64,000 nt of DNA from Phaeosaccion multiseriatum (taxonomy: Eukaryota; Protista; Ochrophyta, other classes): the NCBI GenBank assembly GCA_965112735.1, contig OZ218954.1, positions 124,001-188,000 of the forward strand. The letters are read 5' to 3'. The position numbers and the translations under genes were made by a program. The notes under the pieces were generated by a model that was not told where the DNA came from, ran no database searches, and saw only the letters and a program-made list of their open reading frames with translations. Position 1 is the first letter of the stretch. Each line of letters opens with the position of its first letter. Shown one piece after another: positions 158 through 4,814 of the stretch.

Positions 158-1270
158 TTGGAGAGAGAGAAAGAGCTACTCCTTCTTCGTTTCGAGCTAC
201 AACCACCAGCTCGTTCCCACCACCCCGATGGCAAAGGAGACGAAGAGATCCAAGTGGGAGAACAAAAAAGAAAGGGGTGCAACAAGCGGAAACGGGGGAC
301 CTCTGGAGGAGAGGATGGAGAAGGGGGACGAGCGGCCTCTGCAACGGAAGGGCGAGTTTCTTCTCATCGAGCTGAATCGGGCAGCTGTGCACATGCCTTT
401 GGCATGAAGGAGGTGTATGGAAAGGTGATGGAGCTTGTGGGGCAGGGGGAGTATGGTTTCGTCGCGACGGTGTGCAAGGAGTGGAGGGGGTACTACATCG
501 TTGCGCACCCTGCCGCCACGAGCCATAGGAGTGTAGTTGCCTCCGTCGAGCGTGTGTACTGGGCCAGGAGGCACGGCTACGAGCTTACCATCAGCACCTT
601 GAGGGCTGCTGCTCAGTACGGAGGTGCGAGCTTATGCAAGGCCCTTGTTCACATGGGTTGTCCCCGGGATAAGACGGTGTATACATGGGCGGCACGGAAC
701 GAGCGGCATAGCGTGAGTATGCTCAAGTCGCTGTGCTGTGATGACTGGAGTGCCTGTGCGGATGCGGCGGAGAGAGGGGACTTGGATCTGCTGGAGCTGC
801 TTGTATCGGATGAGGTGGACGCACCCTTTGATCGGAATGTGTGGCACAAAGCTGCTCAGGGAGGGCGGGTGTCTGTGCTTGAATGGCTGCTAAACAATCC
901 CAAGGTCAGAGCTAAGATGAAGGGAACGTGGTGGGAGCATAGTGTATGGGCGAATGGGCCTTCTGATGCTGCAGGTGGCTCTCACCTCTACGCTCTACAG
1001 TGGATGCATGCCAACGTGCGTCAGTTCTGTGACTGGAATGAAGACGTTTGCGCGTCCGCGGTGGAGAAATGCGACAACAACCTGGAAGTACTGCAGTGGC
1101 TGCGCTCAGAAGAGGTGGGCTGTCCGTGGGACGGGCGTGCGTGTCCTGAGTACAGCAGGAGATATCTTGAGGCACGTGGGGAGGAATGGGAGTACATGGG
1201 CGAGGACACCTTTGAGGAACTCAAGGAGTGGGTCCATGCGAATGGACACCCCTGCAACTGCGAGGACTGA
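2..1270 (+). CDS. Intronless ankyrin-like repeat protein (algal/giant-virus type GCPWD repeats) with N-terminal coiled-coil repeat; 5'-truncated by the window edge
   Basis: The frame of ORF 158-1270 is open back to base 2. It has an F-box-like segment (VMELVGQGEYGFVATVCKEWRGYY) followed by repeats CADAAERGDLDLLELL, AAQGGRVSVLEWL, AAGGSHLYALQWM and LEVLQWLRSEEVGCPWD. Confidence 0.75.
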   Translation, partial: AYERDEKAKEKAHEREREATLLHEKAKEKAHERGEKAKEKAHERDEKAKERALEREKELLLLRFELQPPARSHHPDGKGDEEIQVGEQKRKGCNKRKRGTSGGEDGEGGRAASATEGRVSSHRAESGSCAHAFGMKEVYGKVMELVGQGEYGFVATVCKEWRGYYIVAHPAATSHRSVVASVERVYWARRHGYELTISTLRAAAQYGGASLCKALVHMGCPRDKTVYTWAARNERHSVSMLKSLCCDDWSACADAAERGDLDLLELLVSDEVDAPFDRNVWHKAAQGGRVSVLEWLLNNPKVRAKMKGTWWEHSVWANGPSDAAGGSHLYALQWMHANVRQFCDWNEDVCASAVEKCDNNLEVLQWLRSEEVGCPWDGRACPEYSRRYLEARGEEWEYMGEDTFEELKEWVHANGHPCNCED

Positions 1271-1865
1271 GGAAGGAGCAAGTGAGATGGAGGAGGGGGA
1301 CATACTCATAAACCTTGAGGGGGAACAGAGAAGAAGAATTGACAATAGTATGATCGAGGTCGAATAAAATGAAGTGGATGGGGAGGGAGGGGGGGGGTGC
1401 CCATGACAGACTCACTGAGTGCTGCAGTGAGGGCAGCAGCCCTTGAAGAGGTGAAGCTTCAGACCTCCTTCCTCCCTCTCTGCCTTCTTCCTGTATCACC
1501 AACTGCTACTGCTGCTGCTGTGGCCCTTCGAGAGGGATAGATTATCCATTAACAATCAGCTGAAACTGAAACTGTGGGTTCCTTTATCTTGCTGCCACAA
1601 GCATGGCCTTCAATTCAAGCCCCCCCCTCGGGATACCCGCTCTCTGCCCCCGCCGCTGTCGAAATGCTCTCCTCTGGACATCGACTTAATCGTCGATATT
1701 GAAAATCGAGGTTGGCCTTTGATACGTAAGACGTGTATCATCGATGTTGCAACAGCGATAGGGTCGATAATTTGATAATTTCATATCGAGGCCAATGTCG
1801 TTATCTATTTGCAACATCGATACGGTCGATAATGCAATGTCGAGGCCAATGTCGATATCTATCCG

Positions 1866-4814
1866 CTACTGCCACACGGCCTTGAGGCTTCCCTCCGGCG
1901 CGCCCTCCGCCCCTCCGCTGTCCACGGAGAGCATCTCCTCCTCCGACCACGCCGTCCTGACACCAGCCATACGCAACAGGGAAGAGTGGCAATGTCAGTT
2001 TGCCCGCCCAGTCAGTCCGGTAAGTCAGTAAGTCAGCAGTAAGTCAGTCAAGTCACCACCATTAGTAAGGGGCCAGGGGATGAGTGGGTGGGGGGCATGT
2101 ACACCCCAAAGGAGGAGCAACACCCCCTTGGGATAGAGTACGAGTATCAGCTCAAGAAAGTGTCACAGATACAAATAGAGCTGCGCATTACAGTTACAAA
2201 GAGTTGCGCCTTACCTGCCGAACATGGCCCCTCCCACGACTTGATCGATGGTGAGCACCCCCGGGGTGGAGGCGTCAGCTGCAGCCCCTCCGCTCGTCTG
2301 GTACAGCAGTTGGGGATACAGTAGCAGCAGCATTACAAATTACAAGCACAAAAAGGTAGAGAAAAGGTGATGCAATGTATCTGAAAGGGAGGGAGAAAGG
2401 GAGGGAGGGAGAGACACCTTCCCTGCAACTCTCACTGACAACTGACAAGCGACTGCCATCAGACGGACCGCCTGACTTGACACCAAGTATACCCATCTTG
2501 CAACTTGCCACCCTCTGTACTGAAACCCACCCACCCTCTGTCCTCACACACCCCCACCTACCCTACGTCCTGACACCCACCCTCTGTACCGACACCCACC
2601 CACCCACCCTCTGTCCTGACACCCACCCACCCACCCACCCACCCTCTGTCCTGACACCAGGCACTCCCCCTCACCTGCTCGGCCTTCCGCTTGGACCACC
2701 CCTCCTTGCCCAAGAACTGAATGAGGGGCGTCCGGGCAACAGCAGCAGTTGGTGATTCACCCCCCCCCCCCACCCCGGCTGTTGCAGCTGATGCTGCTGT
2801 ATGACCAACTGCTGCCTCTTCACTCGGAGGAGTTGGTGATGCCCCCCCCCCAGCCCCCGCAGCGTCGCCAGTTGAAGCAGCAGCAGCAGTGGATGATGCA
2901 GAGGCGTCGCCTTCTACGACGAAGAGCTTGGCACCGACTTTGACGTCATCATCGACGGAGGCCAACTGCTCCTCGAGCACGCCCGCCTGGTCTGCGCGAA
3001 TGTCTACGCTGATCTGTGGGAGGGTGATGGACGGCAGCGGATGGGGAAAGAGAGTGGACGGCAATGGATGGATGAGTGAATGAGCGAGTGTTAGGATAGA
3101 GAGTGAGTCCGGGCCTGCCGACCGTATGGCTGGCGGGCGCTTCAAGCTTGAGGCTGCCCCCACCCTCTGCTCATTTGCTTCAGCGAGCGAGTCCCGAGGC
3201 CCTAGGCTTGAGACTCAGCAACCCTTCAGGCTTGAGACTCAGCAACCCTTCGTACTACTCCTCCCTTGTGCATCCCATCCCGCCTTGACCTCGCCCTCCT
3301 CTCTCGCTCGCGCGCCAGCAGCAGTGCAGCAGTGCAAGGAGAAGGACTTCCCATTGTATGGCATGGACTACTCCACAACTACTTGCCACAACTACTTGCC
3401 ACAACTGCATGGACTACTAGCACCCCTTCTACCACTCCTGGACCTCCCCCAAGGGACCTTAGGGTTAGGGGGCTCACTCGGCCTCACTGCACACACACGT
3501 ACACATATACACTCGCACACCACACACCCACATAGAACTGACACACAAACGCACACACACTGTATGCAAAGTCCTCTTACCCCCGAGTGTATAGCCCCAC
3601 GTACCCTTACAATCATTAACGCATTCTTAACTACCGTTAACCTACCTTCTCTGTCTCCAAGATACACACCACATCATCCAGCGCCACGTCGTCGCCAACG
3701 TTTTTCACCCATTCCACCAACTGGCCCGACGAGATTGAGTCCCCCAGCCTGGAGAGGGGGGGGCGTGCGGCAATTGAGGGTGCGGAGTGGGGAGGGGGTG
3801 AGAAGGTAGGGAGGGGAGAATTCGACAAAACTGGGGGCAGAAGGACACAACTCTCCAAGAGAGAAGAGCAAAAAAAACACATTCACGAAGAAAGGGGCAG
3901 AGCAGGTCACTGACCCTCGCCCTCTCTCTCCCTCCATCCCTCTCTCTCTCTCTCTCTCGGCTTCTTTCCTTCCTCCTCTTCATCTCAAATGAAGCTGAAA
4001 GTGCAAACTTACGTGGGGACCACCATTGTATGTTTGTCAAGGCGTGGGGCAGAGACTCGGAAGGCCCCCAACTCTCCTCCCGAGAAGAACGTTCCCGAGA
4101 CTGTTCCTCCCCCCACCCCACCCCCCCCTCCTCCTCTTCTGCCTCCTCCTGCCCCCTCTCTGTTTCTGCTGTGCACACCCCTGCTAGCCCGTGGGCACAT
4201 CTGGCCACGCAATTGGGCAGGGGTGGACGGAGGGAGGGGCCGGGAGGTGGATGGGGTTGGGGGGAAGTGGGGTTGAGCGGAGCGCCTTCAATGGAAGCGA
4301 TGATACGACTAGTCGCTACGGACGATAAAAGTAAGCGCGCTGACAGTCAAGATGTGGAAGTAAAGAAGGGGGTTAATCAACTGGGGAGGGTGTGAGGGTG
4401 GAGGGAGGAAGGAATCCTCCATCTTCGTCTCTCCCCCTCTTCCTCTCAACCCTTACTCTTTGGGTAAGCACGACTGCGACGAGAGAGAAGGAGAGAGAAG
4501 CTGCTGGATCACCAACTCCGCTCCCTGCCTTTCTCTGTGCTGTGCTCTGGGGTTCTTACCGGATAGCGCACCCTCTTGCCTGCTTCTTTGCCTGAGCTTC
4601 CTCCTGCGGCTCCTGCTGCTCGGCCTGCTGCCATCCCCCCCCCTCGCTGACCATCTTCTGCGAAAGCTGGAGTGGTTCGCTGCTGGGTTGGTGCGACCGA
4701 TAGTGTTCGCTGCTGCTGTCCTGCGCCAAGCCTCGTCGTCGTCGCTCTGCAGCACAGCGGAGAGTTCAAAGCCCTCCCGAGCTTCACAGCGAAGTTCCTA
4801 GAGGAGGTCGCCAT
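1866..4814 (-). CDS. Mitochondrial lipoyl-domain protein fused to KGD4/MRPS36-like motifs (2-oxoglutarate dehydrogenase adaptor-like), 6 exons, about 352 aa
   Basis: Exons 4814-4560, 4200-4013, 3748-3646, 3013-2675, 2297-2215 and 1956-1866 all join in frame at GT-AG sites. The product has an Arg/Ser-rich presequence ([16 protein letters not shown]), a lipoyl domain ([22 protein letters not shown]...[19 protein letters not shown]), then [10 protein letters not shown] and C-terminal [20 protein letters not shown]. Confidence 0.85.

What the first reader, a model, noticed from the sequence alone, without database searches (positions are those of the whole stretch)
1866..4814. Lipoyl domain fused to KGD4/MRPS36-like motifs, with no E2 catalytic domain
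Seen only after splicing: presequence, an E2o-type lipoyl domain (ETEK in place of the usual ETDK), an Ala/Gly linker, [10 protein letters not shown], then [19 protein letters not shown]. Established: fungal and animal KGD4/MRPS36 carry a PLIKF-type N-motif and an RxxxSxEEIExIxxGGA C-motif, link E3 to the 2-oxoglutarate dehydrogenase core, and lack a lipoyl domain. Inference: this is a lipoyl-bearing E3 adaptor, consistent with KGD4 deriving from a truncated E2. I cannot confirm whether this architecture has been reported already.
Basis: partly seen in the sequence, partly recalled or inferred. Interest (0 to 1): 0.72.

Follow-up and report, generated by a model that had tools for sequence, protein, structure and literature searches.

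The report
Lipoyl-carrying KGD4-like adaptor protein gene
This alga's gene encodes a likely mitochondrial protein that joins the lipoic-acid "swinging arm" domain of the 2-oxoglutarate dehydrogenase core enzyme to two short docking motifs resembling those of KGD4/MRPS36, the small adaptor that holds the E3 enzyme on that complex in fungi and animals. The same design is conserved in diatoms and other algae, and I found no paper describing it.

Summary
A six-exon gene on the minus strand (ATG 4814, stop 1866-1868) encodes a presequence, one E2o-type lipoyl domain (ETEK), a 58-residue Ala/Gly/Ser/Thr/Pro linker, [13 protein letters not shown] and [24 protein letters not shown]. It then stops, with no acyltransferase domain.

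It is not a one-off. An exhaustive HMMER search found 124 real cluster representatives with the same two motifs. Of 235 fetched proteins carrying motif 1, 186 show a lipoyl domain or its end upstream, and none looks like a complete lipoyl-less protein. Named members are diatoms, including complete MMETSP transcripts. The window's lipoyl-free C-terminal 82 residues score 62 bits against the family profile, against 8.4 bits at most for 1000 shuffles.

The link to KGD4 is real but weak. Pfam PF10937 (Kgd4-YMR31) is the only recurrent hit on the tail: 25 of 30 segments at E<=1, best 1e-4. Motif 1 falls on profile positions 1-35 and motif 2 on 84-116. All scores lie below the curated cut-off.

Function as an E3 adaptor of the OGDH complex is inferred, not shown. 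Apart from the lipoyl domain, nothing supports KGD4 descending from a truncated E2. Databases hold these proteins under automatic, partly wrong names. I rate it a new variant of a known kind.

The parts
4560..4814 (-). Exon 1: ATG at 4812-4814 and a mitochondrial-type presequence. An alternative donor at 4652 would drop a Gly/Ala-rich stretch.
   Evidence: 7 basic residues and no acidic residue in the first 51; donor GTAAGA at 4554-4559; alternative donor GTCAGC below 4652.
4013..4071 (-). Exon 2: end of the presequence and start of the lipoyl domain (..[11 protein letters not shown]). The acceptor is uncertain (4071 or 4055).
   Evidence: [10 protein letters not shown] aligns with LEKKTIAVPT of relatives; donor GTAAGT.
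3646..3748 (-). Exon 3: N-terminal half of the lipoyl domain, ending in ETEK. The lipoyl-lysine codon is 3646-3648.
   Evidence: Pfam PF00364 27.3 bits, profile positions 9-40. Best PDB match is E2o chain 9njt_A at 35 bits.
2909..3013 (-). Exon 4, first part: C-terminal half of the lipoyl domain ([12 protein letters not shown]...[11 protein letters not shown]).
   Evidence: Pfam PF00364 profile positions 42-72; alignment with relatives.
2735..2908 (-). Exon 4, middle: 58-residue Ala/Gly/Ser/Thr/Pro-rich flexible linker, encoded partly by poly-G runs.
   Evidence: The equivalent region of relative P0079 has pLDDT below 50. The sequence is confirmed by DNA contigs.
2684..2734 (-). Motif 1: [17 protein letters not shown] (family consensus R-x-P-S-I-x-F-L-G-K-x-G-W). 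Inferred E3-binding motif, equivalent to the KGD4 N-terminus.
   Evidence: R, P, F, G, G, W are invariant in 57 relatives. It matches PF10937 profile positions 1-35 in relatives.
2215..2297 (-). Exon 5: spacer ([24 protein letters not shown]) and the start of motif 2 (MFG, plus 2 bases of the Arg codon).
   Evidence: acceptor ..TGTACCAG, donor GTAAGG.
1866..1956 (-). Exon 6: rest of motif 2 (R)[20 protein letters not shown], a short tail and stop TAG at 1866-1868. Inferred motif for docking on the E1o-E2o core, equivalent to the KGD4 C-terminus.
   Evidence: Family consensus Y-G-R-P-x-F-S-E-E-E-M-E-A-L-x-x-G-G-A-x-x-A-P. It matches PF10937 profile positions 84/94-116 in relatives. The stop aligns with the relatives' C-termini.

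Best explanation

Shown here:
- The architecture: presequence, lipoyl domain with the lipoyl lysine, disordered linker, two short conserved motifs, then a stop.
- Its conservation across many algae.
- The E2o affinity of the lipoyl domain.
- A weak, colinear match of the two motifs to the two conserved ends of the Kgd4-YMR31 profile.

Inferred by analogy with yeast and mammalian KGD4:
- Motif 1 (R-x-P-[SL]-I-x-F-L-G-K-x-G-W) binds the E3 dimer.
- Motif 2 ([YF]-G-R-x-x-[FW]-S-E-E-E-M-x-x-[LV]-x-x-G-G-A) docks on the E1o-E2o core.
- The lipoyl domain swings on its roughly 60-residue linker. It would be succinylated by E1o, discharged at E2o, and re-oxidised by the E3 that the same chain tethers.

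In this respect it would work much like E3BP (protein X) of the pyruvate dehydrogenase complex. The difference is that a short motif anchors it to the core, instead of a core-forming domain.
For: - Gene model and motifs.
- Lipoyl domain: Pfam PF00364 on exons 3 and 4. The best PDB matches are E2o lipoyl domains: 9njt_A scores 35 bits against window exon 3 and 68.8 bits against relative P0079, versus at most 47.5 bits per domain for other E2 types.
- Family: an exhaustive phmmer search with only the tail of P0001 gave 125 representatives at E<=1e-3, of which 124 carry the motifs. Of 235 fetched proteins with motif 1, 42 show ETDK upstream and 144 show the end of a lipoyl domain. The other 49 start inside the linker or at the very end of the lipoyl domain, and none has a presequence directly before motif 1.
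- Independent genomic copy: L001 has presequence, lipoyl domain, both motifs and a stop, in three exons.
- Complete diatom transcripts and NCBI/UniRef entries from Nitzschia, Helicotheca and Chaetoceros.
- The window tail scores 62 bits against the family HMM; shuffles reach at most 8.4 bits.
- KGD4 link: PF10937 hits 9 of 57 members at E<=0.01 and 25 of 30 tails at E<=1, best 1e-4. Motif 1 maps to profile positions 1-35 and motif 2 to 84-116. No other family recurs. An Atlas diatom cluster has PF10937 in 20% of members.
- AlphaFold2 model of P0079: lipoyl barrel at pLDDT 87-95, disordered linker and spacer, and short helices at both motifs with pLDDT around 70-76.
- Literature: the KGD4 N-terminus binds E3 and its C-terminus binds the E1-E2 core (PMC4214781). 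Eukaryotic E2o lacks a PSBD, and MRPS36 has conserved N- and C-termini at the E3 and E2o interfaces (PMC9974300).
Against: - All PF10937 scores seen here (14-20.5 bits) are below Pfam's 22-bit cut-off. The window's own 29-residue last exon gave no hit.
- The exhaustive phmmer search with the tail retrieved no recognisable lipoyl-less KGD4, so any relationship is remote.
- The members are related to each other, so their repeated weak hits are not independent tests.
- An Atlas search with the tail alone gave nothing. The PDB holds no KGD4 chain to compare with.
- There is no RNA evidence for this gene, so the exon 1/2 junction is unresolved.
- The window has ETEK where 37 relatives have an invariant ETDK.
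- No binding, lipoylation or localisation data exist.
Confidence: 0.6

Rival explanations
1. The resemblance to KGD4 is convergent or chance similarity of two short linear motifs. The family would then be a free or differently docked lipoyl carrier. It could be a lipoyl-relay or donor protein like GcvH/Gcv3, a regulator, or an adaptor of another lipoate-dependent complex such as BCKDH, PDH or 2-oxoadipate dehydrogenase.
For: - PF10937 scores are all sub-threshold.
- No opisthokont KGD4 was retrieved by an exhaustive phmmer search with the tail.
- The Atlas search with the tail alone found nothing.
Against: - Two separate motifs match the two conserved ends of the same Pfam profile, in the right order and at the right distance from the C-terminus, and no competing family recurs.
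- The lipoyl domain is closest to E2o, not to E2b, E2p or H-protein.
- Strong conservation of both motifs implies protein partners.
Confidence: 0.2
2. It is an E3BP-like derivative of an E2o duplicate. Motif 1 plus its helix would be a degenerate peripheral-subunit-binding domain, and the tail would be what remains after loss of the catalytic domain. The KGD4 resemblance would then be secondary. Alternatively, KGD4 itself descends from this form.
For: - The lipoyl domain is E2o-type.
- The Atlas nearest neighbours of window exon 4 are lipoyl plus E3_binding fragments, score 0.91 but only 144 shared features.
- MRPS36 is modelled on the E3 surface used by the PSBD (PMC9974300).
- Motif 1 carries a short predicted helix.
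Against: - No PF02817 E3_binding hit at E<=1 on 30 tails, nor at E<=10 on window exon 4.
- The tail profile finds no E2 or E3BP chain in the PDB at E<=10.
- The Atlas hit has a low shared-feature count, and exon 4 contains half a lipoyl domain plus an Ala-rich linker, which alone could explain it.
Confidence: 0.12
3. It is an artefact: a truncated E2o pseudogene, or a gene model that wrongly stops and really continues into an acyltransferase domain.
For: There is no RNA evidence for this locus, and the exon 1/2 junction is ambiguous.
Against: - All exons are open with GT-AG borders.
- The stop aligns with the relatives' natural C-termini.
- Complete transcripts and an independent genomic locus show the same short architecture.
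- Both motifs are under strong conservation.
- Downstream lies a converging ankyrin gene, with no 2-oxoacid_dh hit.
Confidence: 0.03

Closest known systems
KGD4 / Ymr31 / MRPS36 / E3BPo (Pfam PF10937), the fourth subunit of fungal and animal 2-oxoglutarate dehydrogenase complexes
   Same: Both have a mitochondrial presequence and are largely disordered. Both have a conserved P-x-I-x-F-type motif towards the N-terminus and an S-x-x-E-[MI]-x-x-x-x-x-G-G-A-type motif close to the C-terminus, in the same order. Weak colinear Pfam matches fall on profile positions 1-35 and 84-116. The N-terminal part of KGD4 binds E3 and the C-terminal part binds the E1-E2 core (PMC4214781; PMC9974300).
   Different: KGD4 is about 100-135 residues and has no lipoyl domain (PMC4214781, PMC10203282). 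This protein is 273-309 residues, with a complete E2o-type lipoyl domain and a roughly 60-residue linker ahead of motif 1. Motif 1 is extended to F-L-G-K-x-G-W. Sequence similarity is below Pfam's cut-off. Function is untested.
E3-binding protein (protein X, PDHX) of the eukaryotic pyruvate dehydrogenase complex
   Same: Both are non-catalytic subunits that combine a lipoyl domain on a flexible linker with a segment that tethers E3 to an E2 core. This is the closest functional analogue.
   Different: E3BP binds E3 through a folded PSBD (PF02817) and joins the core through an E2-like inner domain. No PSBD and no inner domain is detectable here. The lipoyl domain here is E2o-type, not E2p/X-type.
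E2o, dihydrolipoyllysine-residue succinyltransferase (DLST/Kgd2; e.g. PDB 9njt_A)
   Same: The lipoyl domain is the nearest relative. 9njt_A scores 68.8 bits against P0079 and 35 bits against window exon 3, including the pattern VP-x-MGDSI-x-EGT-x-V-x-W and ETDKVT-x-DI. Both have an Ala/Pro-rich linker after the domain.
   Different: There is no 2-oxoacid_dh catalytic or core-forming domain. The protein ends about 135 residues after the lipoyl domain.

Membership tests
KGD4/MRPS36 (Pfam PF10937 Kgd4-YMR31) | Match to the family profile at or above the curated cut-off (22 bits) | tested here: inconclusive
   The spliced window protein could not be submitted, and its 29-aa last exon gave no hit. 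Relatives gave 25 of 30 tails at E<=1, best E 1e-4 and best listed score 20.5 bits, all below 22. An Atlas diatom cluster lists PF10937 on 20% of members.
KGD4/MRPS36 (Pfam PF10937 Kgd4-YMR31) | Conserved N-terminal P-[LM]-I-[KR]-F-type segment (the E3-binding part) | tested here: met
RTPLIQF is at 2684-2734. The family motif matches profile positions 1-35. The papers confirm only that the N-terminus is conserved and binds E3.
KGD4/MRPS36 (Pfam PF10937 Kgd4-YMR31) | Conserved C-terminal S-x-x-E-[MIL]-..-G-G-[AP] segment near the C-terminus (the core-binding part) | tested here: met
   [14 protein letters not shown] lies 14 residues from the stop. The family motif matches profile positions 84/94-116 of 116.
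KGD4/MRPS36 (Pfam PF10937 Kgd4-YMR31) | Small (about 100-135 aa) protein without other domains | tested here: not met
   The protein is 273-309 aa with a PF00364 lipoyl domain.
KGD4/MRPS36 (Pfam PF10937 Kgd4-YMR31) | Physically bridges E3 and the E1o-E2o core of the OGDH complex | not testable with these tools
   This needs co-purification, complexome profiling or a multimer prediction.
E2o (dihydrolipoamide succinyltransferase) | Lipoyl domain with a lipoyl lysine in a hairpin (E-T-D/E-K) | tested here: met
   PF00364 on exons 3 and 4. The best PDB relatives are E2o. ETEK is at 3646-3657.
E2o (dihydrolipoamide succinyltransferase) | C-terminal 2-oxoacid_dh catalytic/core domain (PF00198) | tested here: not met
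   The frame stops at 1866-1868. There is no such hit in ORFs of the 1.9 kb downstream. Relatives, including complete transcripts, end at the same place.
E3BP / protein X of PDC | Peripheral-subunit-binding domain (PF02817 E3_binding) | tested here: not met
   No PF02817 hit on window exon 4 at E<=10 or on 30 relatives' tails at E<=1. There is no E3BP or E2 hit for the tail profile in the PDB.
E3BP / protein X of PDC | E2-like inner (core-integrating) domain | tested here: not met
   Same evidence as for the E2o catalytic domain.
   124 bits against P0079 over the full length. The tail alone scores 62 bits against profile A2. See also the alignment.

The most novel reading that the evidence does not exclude
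The ancestral eukaryotic OGDH complex had a lipoyl-bearing E3-binding subunit, made from a duplicate of the E2o lipoyl domain joined to the two docking motifs. The small KGD4/MRPS36 of fungi and animals would then be its truncated remnant. On this reading, OGDH and PDH complexes independently evolved the same solution, a non-catalytic lipoyl-carrying E3 tether. In many algae the adaptor's lipoyl group would contribute to flux or to E3-proximal redox control.
Probability: 0.2. Interest if true: 0.8.

Novelty: new variant of a known kind. Interest (0 to 1): 0.62.

Why it matters
Since 2014, KGD4/MRPS36 has been described as a small, domain-less adaptor of fungi and animals, proposed to replace the PSBD that eukaryotic E2o lost (PMC4214781, PMC9974300). 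Its origin and its presence outside opisthokonts are open questions.

A conserved algal family in which KGD4-like motifs sit behind an E2o-type lipoyl domain would:
- extend the fourth OGDH subunit to ecologically dominant phototrophs (diatoms and other ochrophytes, possibly green algae and haptophytes);
- give a concrete, testable hypothesis for where KGD4 came from;
- show a second, independent lipoyl-carrying E3 tether beside E3BP of the pyruvate dehydrogenase complex;
- correct misleading automatic annotations. The proteins are currently named "dihydrolipoyl dehydrogenase", "lipoamide acyltransferase component of branched-chain..." or "E2 component".

The hypothesis can be tested directly in transformable diatoms.

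Tried and rejected
- Word search with the exon 4 ORF gave only one hit, P0001, but that hit opened up the family.
- Two word searches aimed at names and at true KGD4 proteins. The second, a profile of tails sized to admit 52-164 aa proteins, listed only family fragments. No opisthokont KGD4 sequence could therefore be fetched and no hhalign was run.
- PDB searches with the tail as a single sequence and as a profile gave only chance hits (triose-phosphate isomerase, catalase-peroxidase). There is no KGD4 chain and no E2 match.
- The Atlas search with the tail alone gave no usable hit.
- The Atlas search with window exon 4 returned bacterial lipoyl(+E3_binding) fragments with a low shared-feature count. 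I treated this as a lead only, and Pfam did not support a PSBD.
- RNA evidence: no RNA run holds the locus. The four runs laid are DNA contigs that include the introns, and the three \"joints\" listed have 20-21-letter sides in low-complexity sequence, so I disregarded them.
- The supplement of PMC9974300 is not held.
- Four literature searches found no description of a lipoyl-KGD4 fusion.
- Rejected: continuation into a catalytic domain and a pseudogene (conservation, open exons).
- I did not type the spliced protein into any tool. Statements about the whole window protein come from local scripts built from window coordinates.
Full report
**1. What is in the sequence**

The feature lies on the minus strand. 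Six open segments bounded by GT-AG sites join into one reading frame:
- exon 1, 4560-4814, with the ATG at 4812-4814
- exon 2, 4013-4071
- exon 3, 3646-3748
- exon 4, 2675-3013
- exon 5, 2215-2297
- exon 6, 1866-1956, with TAG at 1866-1868

The product has 309 residues. Only the exon 1/2 junction is ambiguous. A donor at 4652 (GTCAGC) joined to an acceptor at 4055 also keeps the frame. It removes a Gly/Ala-rich stretch and gives 273 residues, closer to the 231-283 residues of full-length relatives.

The first 51 residues have 7 Arg/Lys and no Asp/Glu, and there is no hydrophobic signal peptide. This is a mitochondrial-type presequence.

All tandem repeats in the region fall in introns or flanks.

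DNA contigs from four runs of one sample reproduce every exon without a difference, including the poly-G runs that encode part of the linker. These runs may be the assembly's own source. They include the introns, so they say nothing about splicing. No RNA run was found.

**2. The lipoyl domain**

Pfam PF00364 matches exon 3 (27.3 bits, profile positions 9-40) and the start of exon 4 (12.8 bits, positions 42-72) colinearly. The lipoyl lysine is the last codon of exon 3, within ETEK. In 37 relatives ETDK is invariant, so the Asp to Glu change is specific to this gene and conservative.

Against the PDB, exon 3 is closest to an E2o chain. 9njt_A scores 35 bits for a single domain, and the next-best chain, a two-lipoyl-domain E2p, totals 34 bits but reaches only 17 bits per domain. 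The complete domain of relative P0079 scores 68.8 bits against the same E2o chain, versus 47.5 bits or less per domain for E2p and E2b chains.

**3. The tail and the family**

After a 58-residue Ala/Gly/Ser/Thr/Pro linker come:
- [17 protein letters not shown] (2684-2734)
- a 27-residue spacer
- [24 protein letters not shown], across the exon 5/6 junction
- nine more residues and the stop

A word search with the exon 4 ORF found P0001. Its metagenomic contig L001 carries a complete three-exon gene with the same plan: presequence, ETDK lipoyl domain, linker, RTPSIQFLGKSGW, YGRPQFSAAEIEAVMMGGA, then a stop followed by AT-rich sequence.

An exhaustive phmmer search of 1.84 billion representatives with only the tail of P0001 returned 125 proteins at E<=1e-3. 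One is noise, a cold-shock repeat protein. The other 124 carry the motifs.

Across 250 fetched proteins, 235 have motif 1:
- 42 have ETDK upstream.
- 144 have the end of a lipoyl domain upstream.
- The remaining 49 start inside the acidic Ala/Thr/Ser linker or at the very end of the lipoyl domain. These look like products of prokaryote-style gene calling on intron-containing contigs.
- None has a presequence directly in front of motif 1, so I saw no complete lipoyl-less member in this set.

Family consensus: motif 1 is R-x-P-S-I-x-F-L-G-K-x-G-W, and motif 2 is P-M-Y-G-R-P-x-F-S-E-E-E-M-E-A-L-x-x-G-G-A-x-x-A-P. Ten columns are invariant across 57 sequences.

The window protein aligns end to end with 17 full-length members, including the region before the lipoyl domain and the C-terminus. 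It scores 124 bits against P0079. Its last 82 residues, which contain no lipoyl sequence, score 62 bits against a profile built from 30 relatives' tails. The best of 1000 shuffles scores 8.4 bits.

**4. Who has it**

Members with names are all diatoms:
- Nitzschia inconspicua (KAG7346135.1 and KAG7365271.1, named "dihydrolipoyl dehydrogenase"; UniRef name "Lipoamide acyltransferase component of branched-chain...")
- Helicotheca tamesis (A0A7S2N435, "Lipoyl-binding domain-containing protein")
- Chaetoceros curvisetus
- several MMETSP transcripts marked complete

The ESM Atlas places P0079 next to a 154-member, mostly diatom cluster carrying PF00364 in 100% and PF10937 in 20% of members. It also places it next to a 60-member, mostly chlorophyte cluster of 283-residue lipoyl-binding proteins. 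The chlorophyte link is only a lead.

Earlier unchecked notes of this scan describe the present genome as a brown-alga-related stramenopile. Its intron-rich gene structure is unlike that of diatoms. The family therefore spans at least ochrophytes.

**5. Is the tail KGD4-like?**

Pfam PF10937 (Kgd4-YMR31) is the only family that recurs on the tail:
- P0001 scores 17-18 bits, E 0.007-0.018, on profile positions 54/63-116 of 116.
- 9 of 57 members hit at E<=0.01.
- 25 of 30 isolated tails hit at E<=1, best 1e-4. No other family is hit by more than one member.

In individual tables, motif 1 is the best stretch on profile positions 1-35 (P0079, P0048), and motif 2 is the best stretch on 84/94-116 (P0088, P0105, P0083, P0027, P0065, P0153). 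Both conserved ends of the KGD4 profile are therefore matched in the right order, with motif 2 near the C-terminus as in KGD4.

Three limits apply. All scores are below the 22-bit cut-off. The members are related to each other, so the repeats are not independent. I also could not retrieve opisthokont KGD4 sequences for a profile-profile test.

I therefore treat homology as likely but not proven. Because a defining feature of KGD4, a small domain-less protein, is not met, I file this as a variant related to KGD4 and not as a plain member.

**6. Structure**

The AlphaFold2 model of P0079, built with 37 relatives, shows:
- a confident lipoyl barrel (residues 33-110, pLDDT 87-95)
- a disordered linker (115-156, pLDDT below 50)
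- a short helix at motif 1 (170-177, pLDDT about 72)
- a disordered spacer
- a short helix at motif 2 (222-229, pLDDT about 70-76)

This is a folded arm followed by a flexible tail with two linear docking elements. It fits the literature description of KGD4/E3BPo as a flexible tether with conserved termini (PMC10203282; PMC9974300).

**7. No catalytic domain**

The stop at 1866-1868 aligns with the relatives' C-termini. L001 and the complete transcripts end at the same place. The 1.9 kb downstream holds a converging plus-strand ankyrin-repeat gene (158-1270, Ank_2 E 3e-7). Minus-strand ORFs there have no 2-oxoacid_dh hit.

**8. Mechanism (inferred)**

Three published points underlie the inference:
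- In yeast, the N-terminal half of Kgd4 binds E3 and the C-terminal half binds the Kgd1-Kgd2 core (PMC4214781).
- In mammals, MRPS36 cross-links to E3 through its N-terminus and to E2o through its C-terminus (PMC9974300).
- Eukaryotic E2o lacks the PSBD (PMC9974300).

By analogy, motif 1 would hold the E3 dimer, motif 2 would dock on the E1o-E2o core, and the lipoyl domain would swing on its linker between E1o, E2o and the tethered E3. This makes the protein a functional counterpart of E3BP of the pyruvate dehydrogenase complex, anchored by a peptide motif instead of an inner domain. None of these interactions was tested.

**9. Evolution**

Only the lipoyl domain shows E2o ancestry. The tail profile finds no E2 or E3BP chain in the PDB at E<=10, and no PSBD is detected. 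"KGD4 derives from a truncated E2" therefore remains speculation. A fusion of an E2o lipoyl module to a KGD4-type gene fits equally well. Which state is ancestral needs a broad taxon survey.

**10. Novelty**

Four full-text searches found no description of a lipoyl-bearing KGD4-like protein. The key papers describe KGD4/MRPS36 in fungi and animals, or generally in eukaryotes, without a lipoyl domain. The proteins already sit in public databases under automatic and partly wrong names, and some carry both Pfam labels. The discovery is therefore one of recognition and interpretation. My verdict is a new variant of a known kind, of good interest to the 2-oxoacid dehydrogenase field, with function still to be shown.

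Noticed in passing
window 158-1270 (+): A converging neighbour gene: a 370-aa ORF with ankyrin repeats (Pfam Ank_2 E 3e-7, Ank_4 E 4e-6). It ends about 600 bp from the stop of the lipoyl gene. Earlier notes describe it as part of an F-box-like/ankyrin array.
   Followed up: partly
window 2508-2644 (intron 4): A compound tandem repeat of CACCCACCC-type units with periods 4, 12, 19, 27 and 46. Short-read contigs of all four DNA runs break at 2585-2653.
   Followed up: partly
window 2757-2772 and 2842-2853 (exon 4, coding): Runs of 10-12 C on the plus strand (G on the coding strand) encode poly-Gly inside the linker. They are length-stable in four DNA runs, but they are mutation-prone homopolymers inside a reading frame.
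   Followed up: partly
window 1690-1865 (3' flank of the gene): AT-richer stretch with repeated TCGATA- and GGCCAATGTCG-containing units (for example 1786-1812 and 1838-1864) just downstream of the stop. It could be a 3'-UTR or intergenic repeat. Function is unknown.
   Followed up: no
L001 684-1610 (+): In this relative the lipoyl domain is split by introns at different positions (after ..DSITE and after ..FGNV) from those in the window gene (before LGDS and after ETEK). Intron positions within the domain are therefore not conserved between lineages.
   Followed up: partly
proteins P0141/P0234 (Nitzschia inconspicua KAG7346135.1, KAG7365271.1): These public entries of the family are named "dihydrolipoyl dehydrogenase" (E3), although they contain only a lipoyl domain and the two motifs. 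This looks like an annotation error that could propagate.
   Followed up: partly
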